Below are positions 29,505 through 59,860 of a DNA stretch of 64,000 nt, in pieces (within the stretch, counting starts at the first letter, position 1; each line of letters begins with the position of its first letter). The translations under genes were made by a program, and so were the position numbers. Under the pieces are notes generated by a model. The model was given only the letters and a program-made list of their open reading frames with translations, did no database searches and was not told the DNA's origin. The stretch is taken from the NCBI GenBank assembly GCA_053919585.1, contig CM132825.1; one strand, given 5' to 3'. Origin of the DNA: Euprymna scolopes. Its lineage: Eukaryota.

Positions 29505-29834
<330 letters not shown>

Positions 29835-38697: not shown

Positions 38698-38832
38698 GAA
38701 GATATAGAATCTGCCAAAAAAGATTGGGAGTTGGCACGTCTTAAGGCATTGAAAGAAGAAGAAGAAATGAGAGCGGAATTAGAAGAGGACGAGATGCTAT
38801 TTACGTACGCCAGGGATGATGCATACAATCAG
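38698..38832 (+). CDS. dom: domino exon 32 short form (EDIESAKKDWEL...TYARDDAYNQ), spliced at internal donor for the p400/DOM-A-type isoform
   Basis: ttcag acceptor; CAG|gtgaag donor at 38833 in phase 0 with exon 33. Confidence 0.85.
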
Positions 38833-41800
38833 GTGAAGAATAAATCTAAAAAGAATAAATCTGTTAAGACAAATAATAAAAATAAAAGCAGTAGTAAGGT
38901 AGCTAATTCTAAAAAGGTAGGGGTTGGCCGCAAAAGTTCTCGAAGATCTGCTGGTAGCTCAGACATTGCAAAGTCGAAAAGCAATGGGGTTCATGGTACA
39001 AAACGGTCATTGTCTAATAACAATGGTGCTAATTCAGATTCTGATGTAGTCGTCCCAAGCCGTGGTGGTAAAACTAAAGGAAATAGTTTTAAATCTGATC
39101 AGACCTCCCAAGAATCTGTTCATTCTAAACAAAATTCAAAGAAAGATACAAAAAATTCATCCACAAATACAAACTTATTGAATAAATCTAATGCAAGCCA
39201 AAAATGTTCTCTCCAAAATTCTATTGTTAATGCTAAATCTTCTGTTTCTAATTCGGTGACTGGGTCAAAAGCATCCACATCTAATTCTTCTAACCAAAAG
39301 ATAAATCCTGGTTCAACTTCTAAAAAATCAAAAAAGACTAGTTTAAATAAAAAGGTTGCAACTCCAGCTGTTGCTAAGAAAACGTCTGGGTCTACAACAA
39401 CAAAAAAGGGCAAAAAGTCACCTGGCACAAAAAAGTCACCTGGATCAGCTTCTGGAAAATCGTGTTGCTCTCCCTCATCCAAGAAGGTATCAGGTTCTCC
39501 CCTAAATAAGAAAATGCCTATTTCAACCAGTATAACTACTGTTGCTACGAATACTCCTGTTGCTGTTAGTAAAAAGGGGACAGGAACCAAAAAGGTATCA
39601 AAAAATAGTACTTCCAAGAAATTATTTGAAGTAACATCCTCATCTTCATTACCATCTCCATCTTCGGTAATGACAGCCTCGTTACAGGTGTGTTCTCCAA
39701 TGCAGATGGTGTCTCTGGCTACTACTGCCAATTCACAGAGCACAATTATGACCTCCAGTTCACAAACGTTGCCAACTAGTGTGATCAGTACCCAACTTTT
39801 GCCAATTAGTACTGTTGATACTCCTGTGCTAACGACAACAGTAGCAACAACTTCAGCGACTAAAGTTCTGTTTTCTACTGGTACTCAAGTTATGTCTGCT
39901 ACATCTGCAGCTACAAAAGCACTATCTTTTAGTGGTGCAAAGGTATTTCAGACTACTTCGCTTGGTACTCAGTTCATACAAAGAACATCAGCTGGGACTC
40001 ATCTTATGCCAGTTATTACCACTAACACCAACCAGATAATGCCAGTGCCATTGTCTTCCTTGACACATAAAGTACCGTTAGCAAACTTTGCTCATAAAGT
40101 TCCTATAAGTCATATTACTAAAATGGTCCCTATTACACAAAAAGTTGGAACTTCTAAAATTACCAAAAAGGTTCAGATGAAAATTCCTGAAACGATCCTT
40201 TCTCAAAATATACAAGGTACCACAATTACTCAAAAAATACCCGTTAATGCGATAACACAAAAGGTTCCTATGGCTACTATTACGCAAAAAGTACCTATTA
40301 ATACTATTACACAAAAAGTACCAATAAATACAATAACCCAGAAAGTACCCATAACAACCCTAACCCAGAAAGTACCGCTAACCACTGTTACACAGAAATT
40401 ACCTGTTTCAACAGTGTCACAAAAGATGCCTGTTACAACAATGGCGCAAAAGGTTCCAATAACGACGATGATGCAGAAGGTGCCCATATCTACAATGACG
40501 CAAAAGGTACCCATAACAGCCATAACACAGAAGGTGCCGATGACTCAGAAAGTACCCATATCTACGATGACGCAAAGGGTGCCCATATCTACGATGACAC
40601 AAAAGGTGCCCATATCTACGATGATGCAAAGGGTTCCCATTTCGACAGTGACGCAAAGGGTGCCTATATCGACAGTGACACAGAGGGTACCCATATCTAC
40701 GGTAACGCAGAGGGTACCTATATCTACGATGACACAGAGGGTGCCTGTTTCAACAGCTACCCAAAAGATTCCAATAAATACACCTTCTCATAAGGGGCCC
40801 ATAGCTACAATAACTCATAAAGTACCATTTACTACAATCACCCATTTACCCGTTTCCTCCATAACTCCAAAGATATCCACCCCATCTATTTCACAAGTTC
40901 CAATTACTTCTATTACTCAAATACCCGTCACCTCAATAGCTAATAAAATACCTACTTCAGTACATCAGAATGTTGGTCAAAAGTTGCCGATTACAACCAT
41001 TACTCAAAAATTGCCCATAAGTACGCTAGCTCATAAGATACCAGTCACTATTGCTACTCAAAAATTGCCTGTATCTGTGCTTCAGCAAAAATTGCCAATG
41101 GCTATAGCAACTCAAAAAATGCCAGCAACTACTCTTACACAAAAGTTTATTGTTTCTACCCCCACTCAGAAATTGTTAGTATCCACTCCAACCCAGAAGC
41201 TACTTGTCCCCTCTCAAGGTCAGAAGCTACTTGTCCCCTCTCAAGGTCAGAAGCTACTTGTCCCCTCTCAAAACCAGAAAATGCTTGTTACTTCTTCGAC
41301 CACACAAAAGATTCTGGTGTCTGCACCCACTCAGAAGTTGCTTGTTTCGGCGCCAACTCAAACCCTCTTAGTTTCCACCTCCCCAAGCCAGAAATTTCCC
41401 TTGTTGTCCACTCAAACGATACTTCCAAAGGCTGCTACTACTTTATCCACCCAGAACTGCCCAAATGTTGAGAGTGTCCTAACTGCCCCTGTTCAATATA
41501 CGTCAGTTATTACGACCCCAATCACTACAGCAACATCATCGTTCACTCAGCCATGGTCAAATCCAAATCTTGTGATACGTACCAGGCGTGCATCTATGCA
41601 AGAGTCTAAGAAGCGAGCAGATTCTTCAGAGAGCCGCGAGCCAGATAGAGAAGGATTAAGTAACGAAAATGTAGAGCGCACTTTAAATGTAACGAATAAT
41701 CTGAACAATATCAGTATAGATCTACCAGAGAGCCTACGCCTCGCAGATACAATTACGACTGATGGGGAGGGAAAACAGATATTAAAAATCTCACAGCAGC

Positions 41801-41901
41801 CTAACTCGAAACAGATTCAAAATATTAACGGACCAAAGTTGCCAGAGAAAATTACAACTTATTGTATAGAATCAGGAGATATATTGCCAGAGAACGGATG
41901 A
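38698..41901 (+). CDS. dom: domino exon 32 long form: terminal exon of a SANT-less (DOM-B/SRCAP-type) isoform; Lys/Ser-rich region plus nonapeptide repeats
   Basis: 3.2-kb stop-free frame continuing the host phase, higher GC than introns, synonymous variation between repeat units, TGA at 41899-41901. Confidence 0.88.
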   Translation, partial: EDIESAKKDWELARLKALKEEEEMRAELEEDEMLFTYARDDAYNQVKNKSKKNKSVKTNNKNKSSSKVANSKKVGVGRKSSRRSAGSSDIAKSKSNGVHGTKRSLSNNNGANSDSDVVVPSRGGKTKGNSFKSDQTSQESVHSKQNSKKDTKNSSTNTNLLNKSNASQKCSLQNSIVNAKSSVSNSVTGSKASTSNSSNQKINPGSTSKKSKKTSLNKKVATPAVAKKTSGSTTTKKGKKSPGTKKSPGSASGKSCCSPSSKKVSGSPLNKKMPISTSITTVATNTPVAVSKKGTGTKKVSKNSTSKKLFEVTSSSSLPSPSSVMTASLQVCSPMQMVSLATTANSQSTIMTSSSQTLPTSVISTQLLPISTVDTPVLTTTVATTSATKVLFSTGTQVMSATSAATKALSFSGAKVFQTTSLGTQFIQRTSAGTHLMPVITTNTNQIMPVPLSSLTHKVPLANFAHKVPISHITKMVPITQKVGTSKITKKVQMKIPETILSQNIQGTTITQKIPVNAITQKVPMATITQKVPINTITQKVPINTITQKVPITTLTQKVPLTTVTQKLPVSTVSQKMPVTTMAQKVPITTMMQKVPISTMTQKVPITAITQKVPMTQKVPISTMTQRVPISTMTQKVPISTMMQRVPISTVTQRVPISTVTQRVPISTVTQRVPISTMTQRVPVSTATQKIPINTPSHKGPIATITHKVPFTTITHLPVSSITPKISTPSISQVPITSITQIPVTSIANKIPTSVHQNVGQKLPITTITQKLPISTLAHKIPVTIATQKLPVSVLQQKLPMAIATQKMPATTLTQKFIVSTPTQKLLVSTPTQKLLVPSQGQKLLVPSQGQKLLVPSQNQKMLVTSSTTQKILVSAPTQKLLVSAPTQTLLVSTSPSQKFPLLSTQTILPKAATTLSTQNCPNVESVLTAPVQYTSVITTPITTATSSFTQPWSNPNLVIRTRRASMQESKKRADSSESREPDREGLSNENVERTLNVTNNLNNISIDLPESLRLADTITTDGEGKQILKISQQPNSKQIQNINGPKLPEKITTYCIESGDILPENG
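40063..41410 (+). repeat. Coding 27-bp / 9-aa repeat (TQKVPISTM-like), roughly 45 units
   Basis: Visible in the translation of the long exon 32. Confidence 0.9.
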
Positions 41902-42136
41902 TTTAAAATAGATAATCAATAGAAATAATGTTACCATATATTATATACATATGCCGCCACCATTCTTAAATGTTTTTTTTTATTTTGTAAAAAAAAAAAA
42001 GTCCTTTTTTTTAACATTTTTTTATATATAAATATAACAAAGATTGTTATTGAATGAAAAGTAAAAATAACAAGGATTCTCTCCGATCTTGCAGTTTTTT
42101 GTACTGCATTAAAGTTTTTTTCAGGGCTTAATAATG

Positions 42137-42278
42137 NNNNNNNNNNNNNNNNNNNNNNNNNNNNNNNNNNNNNNNNNNNNNNNNNNNNNNNNNNNNNNNN
42201 NNNNNNNNNNNNNNNNNNNNNNNNNNNNNNNNNNNNNNNNNNNNNNNNNNNNNNNNNNNNNNNNNNNNNNNNNNNNNN
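42137..42278. other. Assembly gap (N run)
   Basis: Run of n. Confidence 0.99.
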
Positions 42279-43434
42279 AAAACCTATCCACTTGTTATCA
42301 GCATCTCATTATTCCTGGTGTGTGTGTTATGTTGCTGTGTGTTGAGGCAAGGGCACTTCTTTTAATGATTCAAGGTTTTTGGTGTTAACCATTTTTATCA
42401 ACCTAGATCATCTCATTTCGCTGGTGTGCTGCAGTACATGGAGCTCCCCATCCCACCATTTTTTTTTTTATTTCGTCTCCCCTTTTGAAACTGATCATTG
42501 CATAATTAGTCAATCGTTTATTGAATATTATGGTTATTTTAAAGTTTTTTTTTTTTTGTTTTTTTTTTTTGTACAATGACTTTACAAAAAAATTAATTTT
42601 ATATTTCGCTTGTCATGTTCTTTATTCAACCAAAGTTTAATCGTTAAAAAAAATGCAATGACCAAAATCACTTATTTAGAACAAACAACATAAAACTTTT
42701 AATTTATACCCAATCTCCTAGATTATTTTCGTTCATTTTCGTAAAACTAAACCTCGCATAAGGACTTGTTTTATACGAGATATAATAGTTTTTAGCTTGT
42801 AAGCTCGGCTAAGATCACTTTTCAATTTAATATTAGCTTAATTTTCCTTTTTTTTTTTTTTTTTTTTGACAAATATTAAAATAAAAACTATTCTTGAAAT
42901 ATATTTAATTTGTATTTTTTTTTTAATCTTTGATCTGAGATTTTTTTTTTTTTTTTTTGACAAATTATTTCTAATTCATAGAATTAGTTAAAACTCAAGT
43001 TTTTATTAATTTTCTCTAAAGTCTATTGTCTCTAGATTTGTCTTCTATCTTTTTTGTATGTGTGTTGTATAAGTAACTAAAGTAACTCACCCTCAGTTCA
43101 GTAGTTGGTTTCATTATGTTTACATAGGTGCATACATAAGTATGTACTTGAAAACATGATTATGTATATATGCTTCTATATATAGTTGTTAGTCGGCACC
43201 AAATACCTTGTATCAAGCTGTGCCTCCCAGACAGCTCCTTACACCAAGGAAATGAGATGCTGATTAGCTGCAGAATCGTTAACATTCAGCTGTTAATCAC
43301 AGGAAATATTTAATTTGCAATTTTAGGGGGGGGAAACATATAATGCTTGCACTGGTGTGCAGTTGTAAATAAACACTTAGCATTATGAGCAAGTGCAATT
43401 TTTCAATGCATTTCTCACTCCACTTTATTTGTTG

Positions 43435-43465
<31 letters not shown>

Positions 43466-44849
43466 GTATGTATATATATATATATATATATGTGTAATCA
43501 AATTAACTAAATCTTCATTTTTCAGAATTTATTTTTTTATTGTTCAGTTATATAACATTTACTAGATTTTTTAAAAATGTTTTTATATTAAATTTTAAGA
43601 TACAATTTAAAAAGAAATAGATTCAAACAGTTTATGAAAATCTATAAAAATAAGGAAAAAAAGTCATTTTTATTTAGTACTATAGAACTTCACCAAATAC
43701 CTTTGATGATAGAAGTGGCCAGGCTTGGAATGTTTTTATTCAACTTCTGAATATTATTACATTGAAGTTGAATTAATTTTTTTTTTTTTTTAGTTTTGAT
43801 TGTTGCATGCTTTGTATATATTTATTTTAGCTGTTTTTGTTATGCTGTTTTTTTTAAATTATGATTTTTGTGCCATCTCTTATCGATAATATTTCAAGTA
43901 AGTATAAAAAAAAAATCTTTGGAATAGCCAATCAAAATAACCAAAACAAAGAAAGTCTGGCATAAGGGAGCATCATGTACTTAGTTTGAAAATGGAGAGT
44001 GAATAACGAACAATAGCAAGAATAAAAAAACAAAAAAAAACTAAAGGTCGTTCGACAAAATAGTTATTTTATGAAAAAGACTAAGTGGGTGGCAATTGTA
44101 GCAGTAGTAGTAATAAAGGTATATTTTTCAAGGACACTCAAGATTAGTCTAAAGGGTTACCCAAACAGATCCGCATATGCAACTTTTCGTTAATCTTTAA
44201 TGAAATAGGCAAAAAAATCGTTTTATTATGAAGATACTTAAACGAAACAAGAAAAAAGGATGAAACCTTAAATTAAGAATAACTTTTTTCTTCAATTTTT
44301 TTCACTGATTATGTATTTAAAAAAAAAAAAAAAAAAATTCCAGAATGTTTGGGTTTGGTTTATTGAGTGGGAACAAAGGAGGCAAAAGTAACACCTGGAA
44401 CATCTACCTTATAAAAATGTGTCCATTACTATTCTATTCAGGGATGGGACTTCTCAAATTCAGAAAAGGCAAACATTTACTTTCTAAAATTTTATTACCT
44501 AGATAGAGGTTTACGTATTCACAAATTATTTTCACCTAGAACTCATAAAAACCTACATATATAAATAATGGATCGAGAACTGTCACTTTAACAAAAATAA
44601 TTTTTTTTTTTTTTATGTAATGTTTAATAAATTTTAAACAAAAGAAAGGTTGAACGATTAATATTGTGCATACAGAGATAATAACAAACTAAATTTAAAT
44701 AAAATGAGTGACATAAAGAGGAAAATTCTGCAGTCCAGTGGTTGGAAAGAGCATTGGAGGCAATTCAATTTTTAATAAGTGCAGTGGAATTACTAGTAAG
44801 TTTAGAGATGGACCAGTCTGTAAGAAGTTTAAGACGATATAACTATCTT

Positions 44850-45400
44850 TGTGTGACAAAGCTATTGAGGTTGTTCAGAAGTTTTTGCTACCTAGGTGAT
44901 AACATTGGAACGCAGAGAGGAGCAGGTGCTAGTGTGATTGCAAGAATTAGGAATAGATGAAATCTGCCATTACTAACCAGCAGAGCGTTACCACTGTCCA
45001 CCAAGTGAAGAGTCTTATCAAGCATGTGTACGCAATGTGATGTATGGGAGATAAAATCTGGCCAGTGAGGGTTGAGGACATGTGTTGCATGGAGAGAAAT
45101 GTGAAATTGATATAATGTGAGTCTTAGAATGACTGAATATGATCTCTCATAAGAAGATTAAATCTAGATAGTATGGGGAGATGTGTGCAAAACATGATAC
45201 TTTGATATTATGGCTATGTTGAAAGAATGAGTGAGAGTTCTTGAGCTAGTAGATGTAGAAGGTTCAGTTCCTGGAGGAAGATCAAGAAAAACATGGAAGT
45301 GGCACTAATGGACTTGATAGATAAAGGGACCAAGACCTTGCTAAAGATAGGTTAAAAGTGGGCCAATATGTCAGCATGTAAAATGGGCATTAAACAACAT
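44850..45400 (+). mobile_element. RTE-clade LINE 3' fragment, degenerate
   Basis: SFCYLGDNIG..GAGASVIARIR..LPLLTSR resembles RTE ORF C-terminal region; stops and frameshifts; related copy at 48470-48980. Confidence 0.7.
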
Positions 45401-47494
45401 GAGGCCTTTCAGATTTTATCTATTTAAAACTAGCAAATACATGCCCCCCCCCCCCATTTATTTTTGCTAGCCTATGAGTGTTGAATGTACATATACTACA
45501 TTGAACAATGGAGGAGGTAATGATAAAAGATAGCATTATGATGAATTAACAGTACCTCCTTCACCTTCCAAAAAAATTAAGAAAGCTTGGGAGGACGATG
45601 CCATAACAATAAAACAGATGTACATTCCCCTACCCGCCCCCCCCCCTCTCAAGAAAAAGGAAGAATACTATGACTACTAAAAGATATACTACATAGCCCC
45701 CACCCTCCAAAGAGGAGGTAATGCTAGACATTTCACACACTCCTTTAAAAACAAAAGAACTTTGGAGAGTGATTTAACAAAACATATCCCTTCCAAAAAA
45801 AAGGGGGGGGGGTAATACCTAGGAGTTTTGTATGGCAATAGAACAGATGCTATACCCCTTTCCCTATTCTTTTAACTCTTCTATGTTTTCTAGGTAACTA
45901 TGCTAGTATTGTATAAGGAATTAATGCTCCGTGGTCAAAAGCTTGTGATCTTGGTTTTAACGATTAATTTGAAACATACTGTGCCACTATGAGGGATTCT
46001 TGGTTACAAAGCCATCTTGGCAACTCTTTTAAAGAATGCCTATAACTTCTGTAATTTTCTTTGTATTAAAAAACTATTAATTCTAAATACCTAGCTTTTT
46101 TTTTTTTTTTTTTTACTTTTGTCATAAGGAGCTTCAGGTAAAGTTATTTTCAGTAGAAATTTATTTCTAGTTTTATAATAACCTATATTTAATGGGACCT
46201 CTTGTAATATAATTTTACTTATGTGGAGAGGGAAAAAAAATTAATAACAAAAACTGGTACATAACTTCATTACTTGTGATTAAAATTTTGACTTTAATAA
46301 TAAATTTATAACAATTTTTTAAAGTTAAATATAAAGTATTAAAAAACAAAAGATTTTAAATTATCTAGTGACCTCTAGCTTTATGTGAGGATATAACATT
46401 AATGAAAGTAAACTTGAGAAAAAAAGATGTCTATTTTGTTTGCAAGACAATCTCTTGCAACCACTGTATTAGTTCGCTTCCAAGAATTCACACAAGTTCT
46501 AATATTATTTTAATGATCATCAGTTTATCATGACACACTCTTTCGGGGATTGAAAAGCAAAACGGTATATTAAATCATAGCTCCCAGCAATGTTAATTAT
46601 AAAATCCCTTAAAAAAAACATTCCAACCATCAGATCTTTTTTATTTTATTTTCTCCAGATTAATTTGCTAACCTAGTCATGTTAAGAAAAAAAAAAAATT
46701 ATATATACACACATTGATAAAGACAATTAACAAAATAGTCATTCAATTGCTAACTGCGTATGTTAGATTTCATGATTCTAAAAAGAAACGTTTCTCCGAT
46801 TTTAAGTTTACTCACTCTAAGACTTTAACCAAGTTTCACATCTTATTTATCAAACTAATTTTGTGGATCTTCTATTTAGGAGACACATTTTACTAATTTT
46901 ATCTCTTTTTATTTGAATAAATTTCAATTTTGCATAGTTGTTTCGACTATTCAAAGAAGTTAATCAACTTCATGGGTGGTTATAAGATATCAAGAAAATT
47001 AATAAATATTGGCCATTTTTAATACGCATTAGATATTTAGAAAGCTTGTTTCCAATCACATAAATATTTTAAAAATTGAAGTAGAAAATACACAAAATTT
47101 TGCAAGTTGAATTGATTATGGTGTGAATTTGATAATGTTACATGATTATAGACAATTAGTTGGGAATGAGAGTAGCAGAAACTCATTATGAAAACGAGGG
47201 ACTAATAAGACATTATTTGGAAGAAAAAAGCTTGTAGTCTGGTATATAATTGTTTATTAGCTGTTTTCACTTATGAGGTAGTTCATTCCTGCCTACAAAT
47301 AACATTGGGTCATCAGAAGAGAATGCGCACTGTTTCAGGACCTCCCTCTATCTATTTTTCTAATGTCATTTATTTGTTTATTTTTGTTTGTGATACTTTT
47401 AAACAGATTCAATTATTTATATGAAAGAGCAGTTTTACCTTAATGCTAGTTGGGAATAATTTTCCTTTCATTAAAGTGATGCTTTCAGATGGGA

Positions 47495-47647
47495 AGCACA
47501 ATTATATTTTAAAGATTTAATTATGCACCGATGTTTGTCGTTTACAAGCTATCAATGTAGCTGAACCTCACTAGGTTCAGCTACATTGATAAGTTGTAAA
47601 CGACAAAACATCGGTGGATAATCAAATCTTTAAAATATAATTGTGCT
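47495..47647. repeat. Near-perfect hairpin, ~74-bp arms with 4-nt loop (cact)
   Basis: agcacaattatattttaaagatt..tatcaatgtagctgaacct / aggttcagctacattgata..aatctttaaaatataattgtgct. Confidence 0.92.
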
Positions 47648-47706
47648 AAAAGAGGGAAAAGTATTGCAAACAAAAATGACATCTATAAAAAATGCGGTAC
47701 ATATTC

Positions 47707-48980: not shown

Positions 48981-50896
48981 TGTTCGTTAGGAACCTTTCC
49001 CCGTGAACCACATTCTACCAAATTGTTTTCCCAACAAAAATATTATACAAACTTGTTACCGAATGAAATATTTAATTCTGATGAACCTAAACCAAATATT
49101 CAAATGTTTTAAAAAAAAAATTAAAAAAAAAAAAAAAAATCTATTATAAAAATGACTCCAAAAATGAATAAATAAAAATTAAAGGAAGAAAATTATTGTC
49201 TGTTTATATGTAAGTCCATCTATGTATGTGTGTGTGTGTGTGTGTGTATAATTTTCAGAAAGTTGATAAAATCTCTAAGAAACAACATTAATAAACTTAA
49301 AATTTTAGAAAATAAACAGTTTGGCAACTACTTAAAGATTTTTATTAAAGGAAAAAAATTTCAATTAAAAAAAAAAATTCTTTTCTTTTTATAATTGAAA
49401 TATATCTTAAATTTCGCATTGTAAAATATACATCAAAGAAGGAAGATATATTTTTCTTTAAGTAAAATATCAGTCTTCGTGTGTTTTTATTTTTTAACAA
49501 TGTCTGTCTGAATATATATAATTATCACACTTTTCTTTTCGGCATGAAAGGACCAAGGTTGAAATGCTGTTAAAATTAAACAATCAAAACCAAATAAGCT
49601 TTTTTTTTTTTTTTTTCTAGTTGGGGATGGCTCATCCTACTGAATGCCAGATATTCCAATCAGATCTTTTTAAAGCTTCTGTCCCTTAAGTACAACTGTC
49701 ATAATTCTGCTCAAGGAAGTCTTATTAAACTTTGCATCAGGATGAAAATAATTTGCTTCAGTTTAGAGTAATATTAACACCTGTGATATGTTTTTCTCAT
49801 CAGTCACTAATCAAAGGTGCTGGCAGTTTCAATATTATTATTCCTAGTGTCATCGGCAGTTTTTGTCGTCGGAATTAGCCTATAAAAACTGTAGTCGTTT
49901 TTGTAGATCCTTATTGAAACTCCTTCATTTTTTGGCGGTTTATGATATTATGTACATGGTCATAAAACCGTTAGCAATAAGACAGAAACTACTAAGCTAA
50001 TCAGGGAATGCATAAAACCCGGGAACATCACGATGGTTAGACAATACAGAACTCTGCAAATATGACAATGGTATATGTTCATTCATGTAATTCTGAGGCA
50101 GTACGTTCAGGACTGCAGAACACAATACGAAAGGAAATCGCTGGTACATCTCTGAGCAAAAACTGGTATGATTAAGCAGAGGCTCTAGTGTGAATGTATA
50201 TCGTTGCAAGTTTGGTTTGTTCAACCGCAGCAGAGGGCGGTATTTACTTGTTGATTAATGTCACATAAACACGTGGGAATAGTAATTTATCCCTGTTCAT
50301 CTTATCTTTTATGTTAAGCTCTCCCTATTTACTTGCCTCCCCACAAGGGCAAAGTTAGACATAAGGTCAATTTTTAATGTGGAGAAAATCCAACCCCTCA
50401 CCTAAAAAAAAAAAGTCTCAGTCCAAATAAAGCTTACTCCTTTACTGACCGAGGACAGCGAAGATGAAGTGTAGTATCAGAAATTTTCTCTGTGGAGAAA
50501 AAAAAGATTCTTGAGTTGTTTTAAAATGAGAGCTAAAAATCTCTATGAAAGTAAAATAAACTCGAGTTGCGTTCATTCGTAACTTAAATGAAAATATGCA
50601 ACCGCAGTTATTTAATCAAAGACAAGTTAAGTGAAAATGGACATTGTTAGCGATGCCATGTCTTATAGTATATATCTAAAATAAAATTAAATATGACATC
50701 TCTGATAGATTAAAACTAGTAAAAAGACCTATGCACAGGATTGTATTCACTAAGGGTGAGAACCAAGAACGTAGTGTTGATTGCTTTGTATGTGTGTGTG
50801 TGTGTGTGTGGGCGGGGGGTAAATAAAGTGAGACTCCCATTGAGGCCCACCTGGCATTTTCCAAGAATTATTGAGAACCTCTGTGCACTCTTGCTT

Positions 50897-50948
<52 letters not shown>

Positions 50949-52169
50949 ATTTTCACCTTATAAATAAAATAAAGTACAGTGTTGTATTTCCATTTTTATC
51001 AATATCAAGTGCCAAGAAGACACCATGATATTGTCGTACTCTCTTTAATTAAAATCAAATACTCCTAATCCTTGTACTCCTTGTAATATAGCGTCCGGAT
51101 ATATATTTATGCTCATAGGAGTCTATCTCCAAAAACCGGAAAGGTGCTACAACTTTAGATAAAAAGATAAACAGTTTACTTCATGCAAGGTAATCCTTTA
51201 TAATGTTAATGTTAAAATAATCAGTTCATTGGATTTTTGAGGTGGGGATTAATTTCCAAGAAATAAAGTTTGATTGCTCACCCTCACATAAACATTGATT
51301 ACTCGAATGAGTTGCTGAGGCTGTCAAAGATGTAGATAATGTAAATAGTCTTAAAAATAACTTTGCCTGATTTTACATTTATGGCATCAAAAATTGATTG
51401 CATAGCAATATTGGGAGCTTTCTTATTTAAAACCTTTTTTATTATTTACTTTAAAAATCTTTCTATATTTACTCTCTAAAACTTTATTATTTAACCCCCT
51501 CCTTCTTTTGTTTATTTTAAAACCTTTTTTATTTAAAAATATTTTATTCTTTACTCTAAAAATTGTTTATTTAATGTGTAATTTTTTTAAAACTAAATTT
51601 TATTAAAAAAAAGACTTAGCTAATTTTTAAATCTGTACAAGATTATTAAATTTTTCTTTGAGATAATTTAAAATGTTTGCAAAGTAAAATGTTTTTAAAT
51701 GAATAAAAGTTTTTTTGAAGTAAACAAAAGTTTTAAGTAAATAAAAAAAGCTTATCAAAGTAAATAATGAAAAAACCGTTTTAGTTGAAGACAATTGGGT
51801 AAAAGTTTTTTTTTATTCTCTTTGTTGACCCCCTTTTCAAATCCTGTTTTCCTGAGCTTTTTCCAGTTCCAATGCAAAAACATTTTCACGCATTCAAAAA
51901 TTCTTTTTGTTTCAAATGTTTCATGTCTACATTTGATGGCAATAGTTCAGTTATAAGTAACTAACATTTAATGAAGTAAAACTTATTCATTATCCTATAA
52001 TAAACACACTTTTAGAAGTTTGCAAGAGTTAAAATATTGGCTTTCCAAAGATTTTACTGATATAATTTTCTATTTATTACAGATAATGTACAATGTCAGT
52101 TTTTTCTTTTCACTGCATTATTTTAAAATGAAGTTAATATTAATTACTTGTGTATACTTTATTTTTTAG

Positions 52170-52205
52170 GTTTATGAATGTGATATTGACCATGAACCAA
52201 TGCCA
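52170..52205 (+). CDS. dom: domino exon 33, 36-nt microexon (VYECDIDHEPMP)
   Basis: ttttttag / CCA|gtaagt, phase 0/0; resembles the EP400 segment preceding WTPPTPPQDD (recalled, not aligned). Confidence 0.8.
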
Positions 52206-53031
52206 GTAAGTATATTTTTTATTTTTGTAACTTTTAGATCCCCATCCACCTCGCTAAGAAAAAAAACAACTTAGATTAATCATTTTATTCAAAACAATTT
52301 TATTTCAATTTTTGAGAAGCTTCTTTTCAGTTGTGCTCTTTACTTTTTTGTTCTTCTTTATTCATCTCTTACTTTCTCTCTCTCTCTCTCCTTTTCCCTT
52401 TCTCTTTTTCCTTTTCTCATCTCTCTCCTCCCTTTATTTTATTTCCCCCTTTTTTTTAACCTTCCCACTTTTCTCCTCTTTCTTCCATTTCTCCCTTTTT
52501 TATCACCTACTTATTTTACTCTGTTCACTCTCTACTATTCTCCTTCTTTGCTATCTTTTCCTCTTTCTTTTCTTTCCATTCTCCACCCTCACAAAAACAC
52601 CTATAATTATAAATATGAAACTTGTTAACTTTAGAGGAGGTATTAATGATTCCTTCTGCTAGATGTGCCTTCTATGCAATTTGGTTGACTTATCAACTTG
52701 CTCTCCCCATAACTTGGCTAAAAACTATTCAAAAAAATTATTTAAGGCATCATTTTGTATAAATTATAAAGAAAAGATATAGCTGTAACTTAAAAATAAA
52801 AGAATACTTTAGCTGACTGACTTTTCATTCAGTGGCCCTGGCTTTTTGCCTTTTGACTTTTATTTAAAATCCTGTTTTCTTAGCTCTTTCTAGTTCTGAT
52901 GCTAAAAACCTTTTCATACATTAAAAAAATCCCTTTCCGTTCAAGTTTTTGACTCCTGTATAGCAATGGCTTAGGTATTTAGAAATTTGCAAGAATGAAT
53001 ACCTCTTCAAAATTAAATAAATCGAAATATT

Positions 53032-53075
<44 letters not shown>

Positions 53076-53132
53076 AATGATTTTCTATTTATTACAAATG
53101 TTATACAAAATCAATTTTTTTTTTTTTTTCAG

Positions 53133-53289
53133 ATGTGGGCTCCTCCAACACCTCCTCAAGATGACAATGATGTTTACATTGATAAGACAATGTTTTTCTT
53201 ATATGAACCAACTGTCATGCCAGAAACACAGTTACCACCAGTTTATGTCAGGAAGGAACACAAGCGTCCTAAAATTGAAACTGTAACGA
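53133..53289 (+). CDS. dom: domino exon 34 (MWAPPTPPQDDNDVYID...LPPVYVRKE)
   Basis: ttcag / A|gtatgt; EP400/DOM-A-type motif; frame differs from ORF track. Confidence 0.92.
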
Positions 53290-54113
53290 GTATGTATCAA
53301 GTTTATATATAACTAGCTTACTCGTATTCCGTTGTTGCCCTAGAAATGAAATTAACTTCAGAAATTAAACTATTAAATATTAACTATTAATAATAATAAT
53401 CATAATAATAATAAAAACAATAAGACTAACAATATAATAGGTTACAGTGGCTGTAATGTTCCTTATTAATTTTTCCTAATTTTGTGGATTTTTTTTTTTG
53501 TTTTTTTTAATTTATTTTTCAAATAGTAATATTTTTTCTGATCTTTGTTGATGATTTTTTTTTATTTCTATTATATTTTCATTTTTATTTTTCTAATTGA
53601 AGATGAACAGTTTTAAGCTACACAAAAATAAACCCCACTAACCCTAAGTAATGTTGATAACTATTCCATTTCGCTTTGTTCAAATGGTCTTTTTGGAGCA
53701 CTTGGACTTAGGGCTATTGTTTAGGTTAAAAAAATACTATTACTACTACTAATAATAATCATACTATGCCTTTCTAAACATTTCAGAGAAACTGAAATTT
53801 AGGGAGTATTTATTAATTGATGTCTAATGCCTAATGAAATTTCATAAAAATCAAAGGTATCAGAATTTTCATAAAGGGCTTGCATTCTCTTTGCTTAGTC
53901 TGCATAAAACTGAATTAAAATAGATATAGCACACATTACCTACCCTTATGTCTAGCAGCTGTTTCAAAATTAAAAATGATCCATTAATTGACTTTGAAAT
54001 AAATCTTACATATAGAAATATATATTAATTTTATTTGTATTTTTTTCTTTCCTTTTGTACTATCTATCCATTAACATTATAAAAAAACAAAATGTTTTAT
54101 TCCTCTTCTTCAG

Positions 54114-54346
54114 CACGAAAGCAGAAGCAGCGCAAAGAAGAACAGTTGAGAGTTCCTCGTTCATTGTTTGATCGACCAACAGCAGCCCTGCTAAAGATGC
54201 GTCGTGAGGCCAAACTCCAGAAACTAAAACATGGCTTGGTTAAGCCAATCCGTCCGATGCAGGTAGCATCTTCAAATAGGCAACCAGTTGAACCAGTGGA
54301 AGAACATCCAGAATGGTTGATTCATGAGGACTGGGCTTTGTTACAA
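54114..54346 (+). CDS. dom: domino exon 35 (PRSLFDR...PEWLIHEDWALLQ, SANT start)
   Basis: ttcag / CAA|gtaagt. Confidence 0.93.
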
Positions 54347-54644
54347 GTAAGTATCTACAAAATAATCATGGTGTTATTTTGGACAATTTTTTTTGCTTGT
54401 TTCAATTTTTGAATGACTCCTTTCAGAATCAGGGGAGACAAATTATGTAACTTTATGCAAAAGCAAAATAAATACACTAAAGTAATACAATAACACAAAA
54501 TAAAGTATTAATTATGTGAACATTTATTGAAATAAAATTAGGAAAAAAATAAGTGAAAGTTGTCATATGAAAATGTATGACTTAAAATTTAGTTTTGAGC
54601 AATCGTTATTGGAAAGTGTGAGACTTTTTTCTTTTCTTTTTTTT

Positions 54645-54692
<48 letters not shown>

Positions 54693-54883
54693 AGCAAAGT
54701 TTTTTAAAAAAATGGGCCAAAAACATTAATTCTTTGACGGAGTACCTCATCTTCTTCCATACTTTTATTATTTCCTGTTAGAATGCAAGCATTCCTTTCC
54801 TACTCTTTTTTTTTTTTTTTTTTGATTTTTTATTTTATTTTTCTTATTATTAAAAAAAAACTTTTAAAAAATATTTTTTACAG

Positions 54884-55111
54884 TCTGTCTTGTCACTTTT
54901 GGACCTAACATTGAACCTGACAGTATTATCACCGGCACGCATTGCCAACTGGGAATTAGTAGCTGATGTTGTCAATTGTTGTAGCAGAAATTACCGGTCA
55001 CCTAAACAATGCAAAAACCGTTACGAAAACGTGATTATTCCACGTGAAGAAGGACGTCTTCTTTATGATATGAATCCACGGAAACAAAAGAAGACGAAAG
55101 GGATATATAAG
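54884..55111 (+). CDS. dom: domino exon 36 (SANT/Myb: NWELVADVVNCCSRNYRSPKQCKNRYENVIIPREEG)
   Basis: acag / AAG|gtataa; EP400-type SANT domain. Confidence 0.94.
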
Positions 55112-55974
55112 GTATAAAAAAATTTTTTTATTTTTTTTATTTCTTCAAATAATGTTTCGTTTAAGACAAAGTTCTTAATTTGTCTTTTCTAAATACTTGG
55201 ATTTGCTTTGAGAGAAATATTTTCATGAATGTTTATCATTACCTTTGAAAACTGAAACAGAATTTTATGAATAAGATTTTATTAAATGCATAAATTTTGA
55301 TTCATCATTATAGCCTACTGGGAGGTTGAGGTTTTCTAGCCTAGTAAAGGGAAACTACTTTCTTTGTGGCAACATCTTATGTACTATTTCACTTCATATC
55401 TGAGATACAAAAATATTTAAACATGTTTTAAGTTTGAATCATCTCTATGATAATAATAACCATTTTAGGCTATCCGAAAAAAAAACAATACTGTGCGTGA
55501 GGTAATAAACAAACAAATTCCTTTCATAAATATCTAATAAATAGAATCCGTTCCATTTTTAGTACATTCAGTCGCATAATTTTATAGATAATTCCCCATA
55601 CATTAAAAAGCAGAAATAAAGAAAACATCTGTACGATGTACATACCCATGAAAAAAATAAAAACGAGAACATATTCCAAAAATTATATAAATCTATTAAT
55701 AGTTTATTTTTATAAAAAAAAATAATTTTGAAGCAATTAATGGTAATTTGTATGCATTATAACATAAATCTTGGAAGCTTGAATTATTGAGTTGTCTCCC
55801 TTTTGTTTCTTGCCTTTTTTTTTTTTTTAATCAAACTGATCAGTGGGGCAGTTACTGCAAGGACACTCATAAAATTTGATTCTCTTATATGGAAAAAAAA
55901 ATCACTTACTCAGTTTACATGATTTTTGGAATATGATATTTTTGTTTTGTTACAAGTATGTATAACATACAGAT

Positions 55975-56136
55975 NNNNNNNNNNNNNNNNNNNNNNNNNN
56001 NNNNNNNNNNNNNNNNNNNNNNNNNNNNNNNNNNNNNNNNNNNNNNNNNNNNNNNNNNNNNNNNNNNNNNNNNNNNNNNNNNNNNNNNNNNNNNNNNNNN
56101 NNNNNNNNNNNNNNNNNNNNNNNNNNNNNNNNNNNN
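55975..56136. other. Assembly gap (N run)
   Basis: Run of n. Confidence 0.99.
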
Positions 56137-56257
56137 GGACAAGAACCATATAAAGATTATAAAATTTTGTATCTATTAATATATATTCATTTATATTGTT
56201 TTAAATGTGATTTTTTTTTTTATGCTTATTTAATTTTTTTTATTTTTATTTTTAAAG

Positions 56258-56542
56258 ACAAAGAATAATCGACCAATTAAAACTAGTCAACTATTTGGGC
56301 AGGATAGCTACTCGGCAGCCACAACTTTGTACACAAGTCGCTTTGAGACAATAAAAAGCCTCTCTGTCAAAAGACAGCCTCCCTTACGCCAAACAGGTAG
56401 TCAGGGACCAAAGAATCCAAAGCATATGTCTGTATTAACAGATAATGGCATTGAATATGAGCAACCATTAAACCCAATTGACGTAGCTGCTAACCGTGCA
56501 GAAAGGATACAACGAGAAAAGAAGCAAAATCAAGCTGCAACG
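56258..56542 (+). CDS. dom: domino exon 37 (RPIKTSQLF...PLNPIDVAANRAERIQREK)
   Basis: aag acceptor / ACG|gtaagt; post-SANT EP400-type motif. Confidence 0.9.
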
Positions 56543-56757
56543 GTAAGTTCAACATCTTCAGTTAAGTAAAGCGATTATTACGATTAATTATCAAGCTAGT
56601 ATGCTGATACAGTTGAAAATTGCAAAATGTTTTTATTATTTTAATGCTTTTCTAGTTGTCAGCGTAATTAATTATTGGTTTTAATGTTTGTGTTACACAC
56701 TAGCATGTATTGGATGGTTTTTAGTGATTGACTTCCAAACTAACCTCTTTTTTCCCC

Positions 56758-56826
56758 CAAGTTCATTCATAATCACTTCTCAAGTTCATTCATAATCACT
56801 TCTCAAGTTCATTCATAATCACTTCT
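56758..56826. repeat. 23-bp tandem repeat, 3 copies
   Basis: Unit caagttcattcataatcacttct. Confidence 0.88.
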
Positions 56827-57421
56827 TCCAAACGTTTTCCTTGGCCATCCTCTGCCAACTGATCTTGTTAGAGGTAATCGATAGTAACTAAATATCGATT
56901 ATTACCTTAAAGGGCATGTTAAGATGAATATAGATTGCAGAGAGAAAAAACAAACAAACAAACAAACATGTGTCTCAAACTGTTAAAATCCAGAGTGATT
57001 CAGAACCTGGATGGCCCAGGGCCTGTAACTCCTGTGCCATTCAATTATCTCCCTTTTAACACAATGTTTACAAGAAGGACATTACAGTTATCTCAACATT
57101 TTAATCTAAGAGTTCTCATCCATTCTTTCGACATCTTACGTAAGCTGACCAGAAAATTCCGACAATAGCACGATCCCTATTTTGCATAAGTACTAGAAAA
57201 TCTGTGAAAGAAACGGAAGAGATCTAAATTATACAAAGTCAATTTGTAACAATAAATGTGTGCATATCCCAAAATGCAAGAGAATAGAATTCCATCGATA
57301 GGCATTCTTTCACAGGTATCCCGAACTGATTACCTGTACGGACTATATGATTTGTCAATGTTATTGCTTCACTTAAACTTTGTAAAGAATTCACTTTGTT
57401 TATCATCAATCTCGATTATTA

Positions 57422-57458
<37 letters not shown>

Positions 57459-57466
57459 TCATACAG

Positions 57467-57664
57467 CATGTGCCTGCAGACCAGCAGCTAACACCGGCTA
57501 GAACTTTGCAGCCTGGTCAGGTGCAGCTTCCGGTCACTCAGCAACAGCAACAGCAGCAACAGATACCTCAGGTTGTTGCAGCTAACCCTGCTCATGTATC
57601 AACTGTAGCAGCAGCCCAAGCGCAACAACTTCAATCAATTGGTCCTGTTTCTGGAACAGTCATG
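57467..57664 (+). CDS. dom: domino exon 38 (poly-Q)
   Basis: acag / ATG|gtaaga, phase 0/0. Confidence 0.85.
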
Positions 57665-59665
57665 GTAAGACTTAACACTTATTACCTACATTACCAAACT
57701 TTATTTGATATCAAACCACACACCCATGAACCATAACCCATTTCCTGTCTAATATGTTTCTTTTTTTTAATTAATAAATTGCCTGGGTTTTTTTTTATTT
57801 TGTTTTGTTTTGTTTGCCTTTGAAATATTTTTAGTCTTTTACTTTTAGCATTAGTGCTTCTTTGTTATGAGCAAAGTTACCAATTTTTTTTTTTTTTTTT
57901 TTTAGGTGTGGAATATCAGTATTATGTGTAGTTTTGGCATTAGTGTGCATACTCTCCATATCCTCATTCTTTTAAGTCATTTCTTAACCTTTTTTTTTTC
58001 TTTTTGTACTTTTTGATACCAGCTTCACAATACTTGCTGTTTTTATTTTTACTATCTAACACATGTACGAACACTTCTCATAGGTTCACTTAAATTCTAT
58101 ATTTGTATCTCTTTCCCTCTCTCATACACGCACAAACACATACATTTCAATTAACATTAGTTCCATCAATACTTTTGATTTCACAAGTACACTACAAACT
58201 TGATCTGCAGGAATTTTTTTATGGTATTGATGGAAGATCTAATGTGTAATGTCAATTGAAAAAAAAATGTTCTTGCACAATTGAGCACTGGTTATTTATC
58301 TCGTAAAATTAAATTTTTATATATATATATAAAAGCAAACATGTAAGCAAAACGAGTTAAGTATTAGGTATTAATTTTAAAGCCATACTTACAGCAGTCT
58401 GAAAATCTGTGGTGTATTATGCTATGTAGGGTAAGCGAAGCTTTCAATGTTTTTGTTGAAGCAAGTAAGGAGGGAAGCCATATTGAATTTTAGTAAAATC
58501 ATTCTGAAAGTGTTTGAAAATGTAATCTCTTATACTGAAACAATTCTGAGCAGTCAAAGTGTTGGAAGCCCCCAAAAAATGAAACGAAAGGGAACGTACA
58601 TTATTTATATACTGAATAAGTATTGGATGACTGTTACAACTAAATGATAAAATGAAATAATTATGGGCACGTTCAATAATTGAATCCTATGAAATATTTG
58701 GTAATGTTGTAAGCTGGGATAGGAGGAGGACATTACAATGAATGAGGAAGTATCTTGCTACCACCTGCAAGTATGACTTGTTTGGGAGAGTGATTCTCCT
58801 CAGAATTATTGTAGGAATTTAGTATATTAAAATAAATTGATATCAATAACCAGAAAACAAACATTAGTGGTAGTGTGACCATATTAAGTGTATATATGGT
58901 GTTTGTGTTTTTATTGATATATTTTTTTTCTAGAGGGGGGAAAATTGTTCTTATTTCATAGAGATATAAAGTAAACAATATTTTAATTTTCAGTGACCAG
59001 GTTATTATTTATTTTTTTATTATTAAAATTTAGAATAAAAAAATTAAAAAAAAAAAAAAAAAAAAAAGTAATAAACATTTAACTACTAGTATATATCAGT
59101 CATGCAGCTCATTAGAAGACCAAAAATATTTCCCAAAAGAAAACTCTTGAGCTAAAGAATACACAAAACTTTTACATGCATTATACATGGAACCCAGTTC
59201 CTTACTGAGAGCAAGGATTTTTTTTCCATAGTTAGCCATATTGAATTTACTATACAGTCATGGAGGTCTACTAACAATGCAAAACAGATTTTCTAATATT
59301 AAATGTACTGTTAAGAAATTTTTTTAAATATCAAAAAGAATATCGTTAACTTTAAATAAGACAGAAATTATTTCAAACTCAAATACATGAAAATTGGGTA
59401 CATAAACTATGACTAAATAAATGCTTAAAGTTTTTGCTTACTAACATCTAAATTTTATTTACGTGTTATTTTCTATCAATTTAATAATCAAAAGATTATT
59501 TAAGCCAACAAAACCTTTTTGTTTTTAATACATGTTTGAACGTCTGTATTTTCATGATTTTGTGACCCAGAACTTTTGGTTTTCAATAAACTTTATATAC
59601 GTTTGTATTGTATGTCCATATTTCAAATGTTTTATGATATACTAAGCTTATTGTCTGCTGTGCAG

Positions 59666-59860
59666 ACTGGATTGTTACAGAAAGCAGATGGCATAGGAGT
59701 GAGATCAAGTTTAAAAGCTGTCCCTATTTCGTGTACCAAAGGAAATCAGAGAAACATTCTCATCAACACTACAGGAGGCACCATATCTTCAAATTCCTTT
59801 GCCGCTATCAACAAGCATGTCTCTCAGGGCCACACAAATTCTCCCCAAGTCACTACAGTT
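59666..59860 (+). CDS. dom: domino exon 39 (TGLLQK...SFAAINK); gene continues beyond window
   Basis: gcag / GTT|gtgagt, phase 0/0, no stop. Confidence 0.78.

What the first reader, a model, noticed from the sequence alone, without database searches (positions are those of the whole stretch)
38698..59860. One gene, two remodellers: a splice fork yielding SRCAP/DOM-B-type and p400/DOM-A-type C-termini
Seen: exon 32 has an internal phase-0 donor (CAG|gtgaag, 38832/3). Read-through gives ~1020 further codons and a stop at 41901, with no SANT. Using the donor skips 13.3 kb to in-frame exons carrying WAPPTPPQDDND, a SANT domain and poly-Q. Established: vertebrates split these roles between SRCAP (H2A.Z deposition) and EP400 (Tip60/NuA4 complex), while Drosophila domino makes DOM-A (SANT, poly-Q) and DOM-B by alternative 3' ends. 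Inference: this intron-rich, apparently non-insect animal uses the same switch, so one-gene/two-complex coding may be ancestral. Automated annotation could easily split this into two genes or drop one isoform.
Basis: partly seen in the sequence, partly recalled or inferred. Interest (0 to 1): 0.85.

Follow-up and report, generated by a model that had tools for sequence, protein, structure and literature searches.

The report
Domino gene with two alternative tails
A mollusc's single SRCAP/Domino-type chromatin-remodeller gene makes two proteins from one fork, a read-through tail and an EP400-like SANT tail; fruit flies are known to do the same, and the fork sits at the same codon in other molluscs, arthropods and probably a sea lily.

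Summary
Exon 38698-38832 ends in CAG|gtgaag. The frame stays open for 1022 more codons to the stop at 41899-41901. Splicing 38832->52170 joins in-frame exons that are collinear with human EP400 residues 2190-2437 (PPTPPQDD box, SANT, Q8).

Public RNA contigs show both forms:
- In 4 of 4 runs a contig is spliced at 33213->38698 and then runs through the donor into the tail. The upstream intron has about zero depth.
- In one run the assembly forks at 38834, and the loose end is exactly exon 52170.

Neither assembly gap breaks coding sequence. One lies 235 nt after the read-through stop. The other lies in an intron, between exons that homologs show as contiguous.

The motor is SRCAP-like (158.6 bits, against 50.8 for EP400), as in Drosophila Domino. 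The same "...NQ|V" fork occurs in paired database proteins of Arion, Mytilus and Biomphalaria, in chelicerates and in insects. A crinoid locus keeps a 775-codon read-through ORF.

Read-through tails share a motif, [WFY]SNPNLVIRTRR, that I did not find in human SRCAP or EP400.

The kind is already known for Drosophila and proposed for Arthropoda. This is a new member with wider phylogenetic reach. Which complex each isoform joins is inferred, not shown. Earlier scan notes held no other locus of this kind.

The parts
1436..1840 (+). open stretch holding the HSA-domain exon of the same gene
   Evidence: Pfam HSA, 56.2 bits, E 4e-15
12598..15919 (+). exons of ATPase lobe 1 (SNF2-related domain), SRCAP-like
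   Evidence: Pfam SNF2-rel_dom on three exons. Exon 15638-15919 scores 158.6 bits to human SRCAP and 50.8 to EP400
28810..30096 (+). exons of ATPase lobe 2 (Helicase_C), about 13 kb of genomic DNA after lobe 1
   Evidence: Pfam Helicase_C; tblastn with Arion proteins
33130..33213 (+). exon preceding the fork exon (..FCAEELQMAE), donor GAA|gtaagt
   Evidence: tblastn. Its last 30 nt are the loose end before 38698 in all 4 RNA runs and map uniquely to 33184-33213
38698..38832 (+). part of the fork exon common to both isoforms, 45 codons, phase 0/0
   Evidence: Matches EP400 2190-2230 and is 70-87% identical to mollusc orthologs
38833..38838 (+). internal 5' splice site gtgaag; when read through, GTG encodes the first Val of the B tail
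   Evidence: It is the only donor in the chain with A at +5. B-type tails in other taxa begin with V after the fork in 55 of the 57 B-type proteins listed
38833..41901 (+). read-through (DOM-B-type) tail: 1022 codons plus stop, low complexity, no Pfam domain
   Evidence: ORF. RNA contigs run 38698-41223 and 41242-42136 with 0 mismatches in 4 runs. 0.97-0.98 of sampled words are held in 19 runs
40063..41410 (+). tandem TQKVPISTM-like nonapeptide repeats inside the B tail; specific to this species
Evidence: The RNA contigs break at 41223-41242, inside the repeat
41554..41589 (+). conserved B-tail motif WSNPNLVIRTRR
   Evidence: A profile search of 1.84 billion representatives gave 55 hits, nearly all in read-through tails of domino orthologs
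41902..42136 (+). 3'UTR of the read-through isoform up to the gap; poly(A) site not located
   Evidence: Contigs of all 4 runs cover it and run over the end of the stretch. ATTAAA at about 42107 is seen
42137..42278 (.). assembly gap 1, outside coding sequence
   Evidence: Bridged at transcript level by the 38832->52170 junction
52170..52205 (+). first A-type exon, 12-codon linker VYECDIDHEPMP
   Evidence: The loose end behind 38834 in run X6 equals 52172-52201. There is a 12-residue linker at the same place in Arion, oyster and Culex
53133..53289 (+). exon with the MWAPPTPPQDDND box (ends in phase 1)
   Evidence: Matches EP400 2247-2294, E 2e-16, with no SRCAP hit
54114..54346 (+). exon up to ..PEWLIHEDWALLQ (start of SANT)
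   Evidence: Matches EP400 2301-2378, E 2e-12
54884..55111 (+). exon with the body of the SANT/Myb-like domain
   Evidence: Matches EP400 2380-2437, E 6e-22. Pfam Myb_DNA-bind_6 scores 22.0 bits against a cut-off of 22.9 on this half domain
55975..56136 (.). assembly gap 2, inside an intron
   Evidence: Flanking exons are phase 0/0 and ..IYK|TKN.. is contiguous in Arion P0005
56258..56542 (+). A-type exon (KNNRPIKTSQ.. to ..AERIQREKK..)
   Evidence: All sampled words are held in 10 listed runs (6 RNA or probable RNA, incl. X6; 4 of unknown kind), and 0.58-0.89 in 8 more. tblastn to oyster, mussel and chiton orthologs
57467..57664 (+). Q-rich exon (Q8)
   Evidence: Boundaries come from splice consensus and frame only
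59666..59860 (+). further A-type exon (..SNSFAAINKHVSQ..); not the last exon
   Evidence: tblastn to Arion, chiton and Gigantopelta; donor GTT|gtgagt

Best explanation
The window holds most of one Domino-type gene of a mollusc. The gene has an HSA domain and an SRCAP-like split Snf2 motor, and its exon at 38698 is a composite terminal exon. If the internal, slightly weak 5' splice site CAG|gtgaag at 38832/3 is not used, the mRNA runs on. It encodes a 1022-residue disordered tail with the motif WSNPNLVIRTRR, stops at 41901, and ends at a poly(A) site in or beyond the gap. This is the DOM-B-type isoform. If the site is used, 13.3 kb are removed and the exons from 52170 on add an EP400/DOM-A-type tail with the PPTPPQDD box, a SANT domain and a Q-rich region. 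Shown here: both mRNA forms exist, and the fork lies at the same codon in other molluscs, chelicerates and insects. Inferred from Drosophila: the SANT isoform scaffolds a TIP60/NuA4-type acetyltransferase complex and the read-through isoform a SWR1/SRCAP-type H2A.Z exchange complex. Also inferred: the choice is a competition between splicing and intronic polyadenylation. The phyletic spread makes the fork older than arthropods, at least protostome-wide and probably bilaterian. On that reading, vertebrate SRCAP and EP400 would be duplicates that each kept one isoform's role.
For: Sequence: ORF, splice sites and an in-frame chain.
RNA: in X7 (polyA RNA-seq), X3, X6 and X1 a contig aligns from exactly 38698. 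Its overhang equals the end of exon 33130-33213. In X7, X3 and X1 it continues through 38832 to 41223 with no mismatch; in X6 it ends at 38834 and a second contig runs 38805-41223. A further contig covers 41242-42136. Depth in the upstream intron 37874-38663 is about 0.
In X6 the contig ends at 38834, the read-through branch begins at 38805, and a loose end behind 38834 equals 52172-52201.
The A-specific exon 56258-56542 is held in many RNA runs.
Homology: the A exons align to EP400 2190-2437 only, and the motor is closest to SRCAP.
Isoform pairs with the same N-part up to the fork: Arion P0005/P0004, Mytilus P0013/P0065 and Biomphalaria P0176/P0117.
B-type tails follow '...NQ|V' in Limulus, a tick, spiders and insects.
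The motif profile finds 55 representatives.
The crinoid read-through ORF has 775 codons.
Drosophila function: PMC7239659.
Against: No biochemical evidence exists for this species. The read-through tail has no detectable similarity to the human SRCAP tail and lacks a GRP AT-hook core here. Its poly(A) site was not seen because of the gap. The 38832->52170 junction was seen in only one of four runs laid, and contigs drop rarer paths. Junctions among the downstream exons rest on homology and consensus, not on reads. Whether the genome has a second SRCAP or EP400 locus could not be tested. The fork codon and the motif were not checked in D. melanogaster itself. The crinoid ORF has no RNA support and lacks the motif.
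Confidence: 0.85

Rival explanations
1. The read-through is non-functional: intron retention, premature intronic polyadenylation or unspliced precursor, with no protein of its own.
For: The tail is low-complexity, has no Pfam domain, and finds no homolog beyond the shared exon in a word-based search.
Against: The same contigs have the upstream 5.5-kb intron removed, and intron depth is about 0. In X6 the read-through branch has depth 70.3, against 57.0 for the shared upstream contig. The frame is open for 1022 codons, P about 6e-28. A 12-residue motif in the tail is invariant across seven aligned mollusc-type tails and recurs in arthropod tails. Read-through cDNA-derived proteins exist in Arion.
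Confidence: 0.04
2. These are two separate genes, or a scaffold misjoin at the 42137 gap: a Domino/SRCAP-like gene ending at 41901 and an independent EP400-tail gene from 52170.
For: Several mollusc annotations list them as two genes, and a gap lies between them.
Against: An RNA contig joins 38832 to 52170. The downstream exons have no ATPase, and the first of them is a 12-codon exon in phase with the fork. RefSeq models of oysters, mussels, scallops, a chiton, nemerteans and crinoids carry motor and SANT tail in one protein.
Confidence: 0.03
3. The fork is real, but the division of labour differs from Drosophila. For example, the abundant read-through isoform might serve both H2A.Z exchange and acetyltransferase scaffolding, or the tail motif might serve localisation or turnover rather than complex choice.
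For: The B tail carries a conserved basic motif of unknown role. Three of four runs assembled only the read-through path. Hybrid models that contain both the B tail and the SANT exons exist for Saccostrea, Timema and Rhamnusium.
Against: The SANT-bearing region that defines the DOM-A and EP400 complexes is strictly excluded from the read-through isoform here. The architecture is the same as in the fly, where the split was shown by affinity purification (PMC7239659).
Confidence: 0.2

Closest known systems
Drosophila melanogaster domino isoforms DOM-A and DOM-B (Ruhf 2001; Boerner and Becker 2016; Scacchetti et al. 2020, PMC7239659)
   Same: One gene with HSA and an SRCAP-like motor, and a shared N-part (first 2008 aa in the fly, about 2010 in Biomphalaria). 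The alternative C-termini are one with SANT plus a Q-rich region and one shorter, unstructured tail. Insect orthologs fork at the same '...NQ|' codon.
   Different: Here the read-through tail (1022 aa) is long, with about 45 species-specific nonapeptide repeats. The host is a mollusc. The fork codon and the WSNPNLVIRTRR motif were not checked in D. melanogaster itself. No functional data.
Human EP400 (p400), scaffold of the TIP60 complex
   Same: The A-type exons are collinear with EP400 2190-2437: shared helix, linker, PPTPPQDD box and SANT.
   Different: The EP400 motor is strongly diverged (50.8 bits, against 158.6 for SRCAP on one motor exon). EP400 is a separate gene without a known read-through SRCAP-like isoform.
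Human SRCAP
   Same: The motor, the HSA domain and the region up to the first half of the fork exon align. The tail after the motor is long and disordered, and AT-hook cores occur in B tails of 19 of 64 relatives and in the crinoid ORF.
   Different: The tails show no detectable sequence similarity. The B-tail motif is absent from SRCAP. This species' tail has no GRP AT-hook core.
Composite terminal exons / intronic polyadenylation switches (for example IgM heavy chain secreted versus membrane form)
   Same: An internal 5' splice site competes with read-through to a downstream stop and 3' end, giving two C-termini.
   Different: The poly(A) site and any regulators were not observed here.

Membership tests
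SWR1/SRCAP/Domino subfamily of Snf2 ATPases | HSA domain N-terminal to the motor | tested here: met
   Pfam HSA, 56.2 bits, on window 1436-1840
SWR1/SRCAP/Domino subfamily of Snf2 ATPases | Split Snf2 motor (SNF2-related lobe, long insertion, Helicase_C lobe) | tested here: met
   SNF2-rel_dom on exons at 12.6-15.9 kb and Helicase_C on exons at 28.8-29.8 kb. Coding exons between the two lobes align to Arion P0004/P0005 residues 103-292
SWR1/SRCAP/Domino subfamily of Snf2 ATPases | Motor closer to SRCAP/SWR1 than to EP400 | tested here: met
   158.6 bits to SRCAP, 80.8 to yeast SWR1 and 50.8 to EP400 for exon 15638-15919
DOM-A / EP400-type C-terminus | PPTPPQDD box after the post-motor helix | tested here: met
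   Matches EP400 2247-2294, E 2e-16; SRCAP is not hit
DOM-A / EP400-type C-terminus | SANT/Myb-like domain | tested here: met
   Two exons align to EP400 2301-2437 (E 2e-12 and 6e-22). Pfam Myb models are just under the cut-off on the half domain of one exon (22.0 vs 22.9 bits)
DOM-A / EP400-type C-terminus | Glutamine-rich region | tested here: inconclusive
   Only a Q8 run in exon 57467-57664. The rest of the tail lies beyond 59860
DOM-A / EP400-type C-terminus | Assembly with TIP60, TRRAP and other NuA4-type subunits | not testable with these tools
   Needs biochemistry
Domino-type isoform fork (DOM-A/DOM-B) | Two mRNAs of one locus sharing the N-part and differing in the C-terminus | tested here: met
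   A read-through contig in 4 runs and a 38832->52170 junction in X6, both preceded by the 33213->38698 splice
Domino-type isoform fork (DOM-A/DOM-B) | Fork at the position used in arthropods | tested here: met
   '...NQ|V' read-through against '...NQ|[VI][FYW].S' spliced in Limulus/Tachypleus, ticks, spiders, Rhynocoris, Timema and Culex. D. melanogaster itself was not examined
Domino-type isoform fork (DOM-A/DOM-B) | Isoforms define separate SWR1-like and NuA4-like complexes | not testable with these tools
   Shown only in Drosophila (PMC7239659)
SRCAP-type C-terminus | AT-hooks (GRP core) in the tail | tested here: not met
   No [RK]GR[PK] in the window's tail. Present in 19 of 64 B-type relatives and in the crinoid ORF
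SRCAP-type C-terminus | Sequence similarity to the SRCAP tail | tested here: not met
   No hit to SRCAP with the tail segment or with the motif profile at E up to 10

The most novel reading that the evidence does not exclude
The Domino fork is ancestral to Bilateria rather than an arthropod solution. The fork is an internal 5' splice site against read-through, at one conserved codon. Vertebrate SRCAP and EP400 then arose when a duplicated two-isoform gene was partitioned, with each copy keeping one tail. That would replace the published 'different evolutionary routes / convergent' reading. In addition, the read-through tail carries a roughly 12-residue linear motif, [WFY]SNPNLVIRTRR, conserved between molluscs and arthropods and lost in vertebrates. 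It may be the handle that specifies the SWR1-type complex or its regulation.
Probability: 0.5. Interest if true: 0.6.

Novelty: new member of a known kind. Interest (0 to 1): 0.45.

Why it matters
It puts the one-gene, two-remodeller arrangement of Drosophila Domino in a second phylum with RNA support. It ties mollusc and arthropod read-through tails together through the same fork codon and a shared motif. Together with a crinoid ORF, this suggests that the isoform switch predates the vertebrate SRCAP/EP400 duplication. That makes subfunctionalisation of splice isoforms into paralogs directly testable. It gives a defined peptide motif to probe for partners. It also flags a recurrent annotation error, in which the locus is split into 'domino' and 'p400' genes or one isoform is missing.

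Tried and rejected
- A word-based homolog search with the whole read-through tail found only the shared exon, because the tail is too divergent. The motif profile (A1) was needed.
- PDB sequence searches with the tail segment, the motif profile and the crinoid read-through ORF found no SRCAP similarity.
- Pfam found nothing in the tail, and only sub-threshold Myb hits on single SANT exons.
- The taxon of many motif hits could not be named, because their sources are ENA or Logan records without names.
- Loci for Antedon P0168 and Culex P0023 were not on record, so the dipteran and the second crinoid checks failed.
- The scan's earlier notes hold no other SRCAP/EP400/domino locus in this genome, but only part of the genome is covered. 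So 'single locus' remains untested.
- The species was not identified. Its exons are about equally distant (roughly 60-85%) from bivalve, gastropod and chiton orthologs, and RNA runs labelled 'mollusc metagenome' hold its exon.
- The poly(A) site could not be placed. Contigs run into the gap at 42137, and the apparent end at 42124 in X7 is adapter sequence.
- Rejected explanations: genomic DNA contamination (intron depth about 0) and a misjoin at the gap (the RNA junction bridges it).
Full report
**What is in the sequence**

The + strand of the window carries most of one large, intron-rich gene. Open stretches give the following Pfam hits:
- HSA at 1436-1840
- SNF2-related domain at 12598-12936, 13724-14065 and 15638-15919
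- Helicase_C at 28810-29154 and 29505-29834

This is the HSA-plus-split-motor layout of the SWR1/INO80 group. One motor exon scores 158.6 bits to human SRCAP, 80.8 to yeast SWR1 and only 50.8 to EP400.

It is followed at 38833 by gtgaag. The frame then stays open for 1022 codons to TGA at 41899-41901. Given the local composition, the chance of that is about 6e-28. The two other frames hold 61 and 64 stops. The 9.9 kb of intron after the gap has no open stretch longer than 101 codons. The tail has no Pfam domain.

**The downstream exons**

The exons are 52170-52205, 53133-53289, 54114-54346, 54884-55111, 56258-56542, 57467-57664 and 59666-59860. All have canonical ag/gt sites. Spliced to 38698-38832 they give 1467 nt in frame with no stop.

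They are collinear with human EP400, and SRCAP is not hit by the A-specific exons:

| Window exon | EP400 residues | E-value |
|---|---|---|
| shared exon | 2190-2230 | 0.059 |
| MWAPPTPPQDDND exon | 2247-2294 | 2e-16 |
| SANT exon 1 | 2301-2378 | 2e-12 |
| SANT exon 2 | 2380-2437 | 6e-22 |

Pfam Myb models fall just under their cut-off on the single SANT exon. The poly-Q is a run of eight residues. Homolog tails are 1000-1130 aa, so the A-type tail continues beyond 59860 and perhaps beyond the window.

**The assembly gaps**

Gap 42137-42278 lies 235 nt after the read-through stop. It is in the 3'UTR of one isoform and in the intron of the other.

Gap 55975-56136 lies in the intron between 55111 and 56258. 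Both flanking exons are in phase 0. The residues ..IYK|TKN.. are contiguous in Arion and other orthologs, so no coding exon is hidden there.

I did not try to fill either gap.

**RNA evidence**

- Nineteen runs (fourteen RNA or probable RNA, five of unknown kind) hold 0.97-0.98 of the sampled words of 38650-42100.
- I laid the contigs of four runs (X7 is a polyA RNA-seq library) on 37400-42136.
- In every run a contig starts to fit at exactly 38698. Its overhang, TTCTGTGCCGAGGAACTTCAAATGGCAGAA, maps uniquely to 33184-33213, the end of the previous exon.
- In X7, X3 and X1 the same contig continues through the donor to 41223 with no mismatch. A second contig covers 41242-42136; the break falls inside the tandem repeats.
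- Depth in the upstream intron 37874-38663 is about zero. So this is spliced mRNA, not genomic DNA or precursor.
- In X6 the assembly forks. The upstream contig ends at 38834 and the read-through branch starts at 38805, about 30 nt upstream of that fork, as overlapping assembly branches do. A loose end behind 38834 reads TTATGAATGTGATATTGACCATGAACCAAT, which is 52172-52201; the GT is shared by the two paths.
- The A-specific exon 56258-56542 is fully held (share 1.00) in ten listed runs — six RNA or probable-RNA, including X6, and four of unknown kind — and held at 0.58-0.89 in eight more.
- In X6 the read-through branch has depth 70.3, against 57.0 for the shared contig. Three runs assembled only the read-through path. 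So the read-through form looks like the major one in these libraries, though contig depth is a poor measure.
- The poly(A) site was not seen, because the contigs run into the gap.

**Relatives**

Arion vulgaris transcriptome proteins P0004 and P0005 are identical for 649 residues. After ...SRNESQ they diverge into VKRGRKP... or MFISDVDGVEMPMWCPPTPPQDD... plus SANT and Q-rich sequence.

The same holds for Mytilus galloprovincialis P0065/P0013 and Biomphalaria glabrata P0117/P0176, where the shared part is about 2010 residues.

In 55 of the 57 read-through proteins listed the first residue after the fork is Val, as expected if a GT donor is translated.

The read-through tails are otherwise unalignable, but they share an invariant box, WSNPNLVIRTRR, at window 41554-41589. 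A profile of that box was searched against 1.84 billion representatives. It found 55 proteins with E up to 0.001, nearly all behind a '...NQ|V' fork. The named ones are listed below:
- Biomphalaria
- Limulus
- the spiders Stegodyphus and Araneus
- the tick Amblyomma
- the bug Rhynocoris
- Timema, which has a variant, FPNPKVVIRTRR

The box is not found in human SRCAP or EP400.

Full-length SANT-type proteins named 'helicase domino-like' or 'helicase SRCAP-like' occur in bivalves, gastropods, a chiton, nemerteans, chelicerates, a myriapod and two crinoids. All have the same junction after the shared exon.

In the crinoid Anneissia japonica locus (L001) the shared exon ends ...REDAYNK|gtgcct. The frame stays open for 775 more codons, basic and Ser-rich, with one AT-hook but without the box. 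This is an ORF only, with no RNA check.

**The annotation prediction**

In Plakobranchus ocellatus a 1609-aa 'helicase domino' gene of read-through type ends 5.4 kb upstream, on the same strand, of a 1049-aa 'E1a-binding protein p400' gene that holds only the SANT tail. Similar tail-only 'p400' entries exist for Elysia, Mytilus coruscus, Nucella and Patella.

Some models do the opposite and fuse the read-through tail to the SANT exons: Saccostrea echinata, Timema and Rhamnusium. I could not tell whether that is a third isoform or a predictor artefact.

**Mechanism**

Shown: one locus, two mRNAs, and a fork at an internal 5' splice site that is the weakest donor of the chain (A at +5).

Inferred: the choice is a competition between use of that site and cleavage/polyadenylation downstream of 41901, which is how a composite terminal exon works. 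By analogy with Drosophila, the SANT isoform would scaffold a TIP60/NuA4-type complex and the read-through isoform a SWR1-type H2A.Z exchanger. Affinity purification showed this split for DOM-A and DOM-B (PMC7239659).

The label 'SRCAP-type' for the read-through tail is functional analogy only. It has no similarity to the SRCAP tail, and in this species it has no AT-hook core.

**Novelty**

The isoform fork is established for Drosophila. Scacchetti et al. already noted alternative C-termini in bees, a wasp, an ant, a beetle and a spider, and proposed that the mode may be widespread in Arthropoda. Their digest describes it as a different evolutionary route from the paralogs of yeast and humans.

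Three further full-text searches and reads found no paper that extends it beyond arthropods. However, both isoform types of several molluscs are already in public protein databases.

So this is a new member of a known kind. Two additions are worth following up: the fork codon and a tail motif are shared between molluscs and arthropods, and a deuterostome ORF suggests the switch is older than the SRCAP/EP400 duplication.

**Limits**

- The species was not identified beyond 'mollusc'.
- A second SRCAP or EP400 locus in the genome was not excluded.
- D. melanogaster itself was not examined.
- Only one run showed the A junction.
- The junctions among the downstream exons rest on homology.

Noticed in passing
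window 41554-41589: The motif WSNPNLVIRTRR is invariant across the seven aligned mollusc-type sequences. With W/F/Y at the first place it recurs in chelicerate and insect read-through tails. It sits in an otherwise unalignable disordered tail and its role is unknown. The RTRRAS end resembles a basophilic kinase site (from memory, untested).
   Followed up: partly
window 40063-41410: About 45 tandem TQKVPISTM-like nonapeptides lie inside the read-through tail. They are species-specific, and the RNA contigs break within them at 41223-41242.
   Followed up: partly
window 33338-37393: A 42-bp tandem array of about 4 kb in the intron before the fork exon is open in one frame for 1352 codons. The RNA contigs splice straight from 33213 to 38698, so the array is not in the mRNA forms seen.
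   Followed up: partly
window 37558-37873: An intronic repeat has very high RNA contig depth (up to about 5500 in X7) from contigs 95-99% alike. This is probably a dispersed element transcribed elsewhere.
   Followed up: no
L001 27572-30032 (Anneissia japonica): The crinoid domino locus keeps a 775-codon read-through ORF after the shared exon. It has one AT-hook (KRGRGRPRK) and lacks the protostome motif.
   Followed up: partly
P0147 (Saccostrea echinata), P0037 (Timema), P0042 (Rhamnusium): These gene models read through the B-type tail and then join the SANT exons. They are either a third isoform that uses a donor inside the tail or a predictor artefact.
   Followed up: no
P0037, P0042, P0086, P0106 (insect read-through tails): A second conserved box, SPRTRSRG.V.INLW.LD, is shared by insect B-type tails and is absent from the mollusc tails.
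   Followed up: no
window 42069 and 41971: Single RNA contigs have loose ends here, in X1 behind 42069 and in X7 before 41971. They may be 3'UTR variants, alleles or repeat joins. The contig end at 42124 in X7 is Illumina adapter.
   Followed up: no
window 23341-23897 and 52258-52659: These are CT-rich low-complexity stretches, open in several frames, inside introns of the gene.
   Followed up: no
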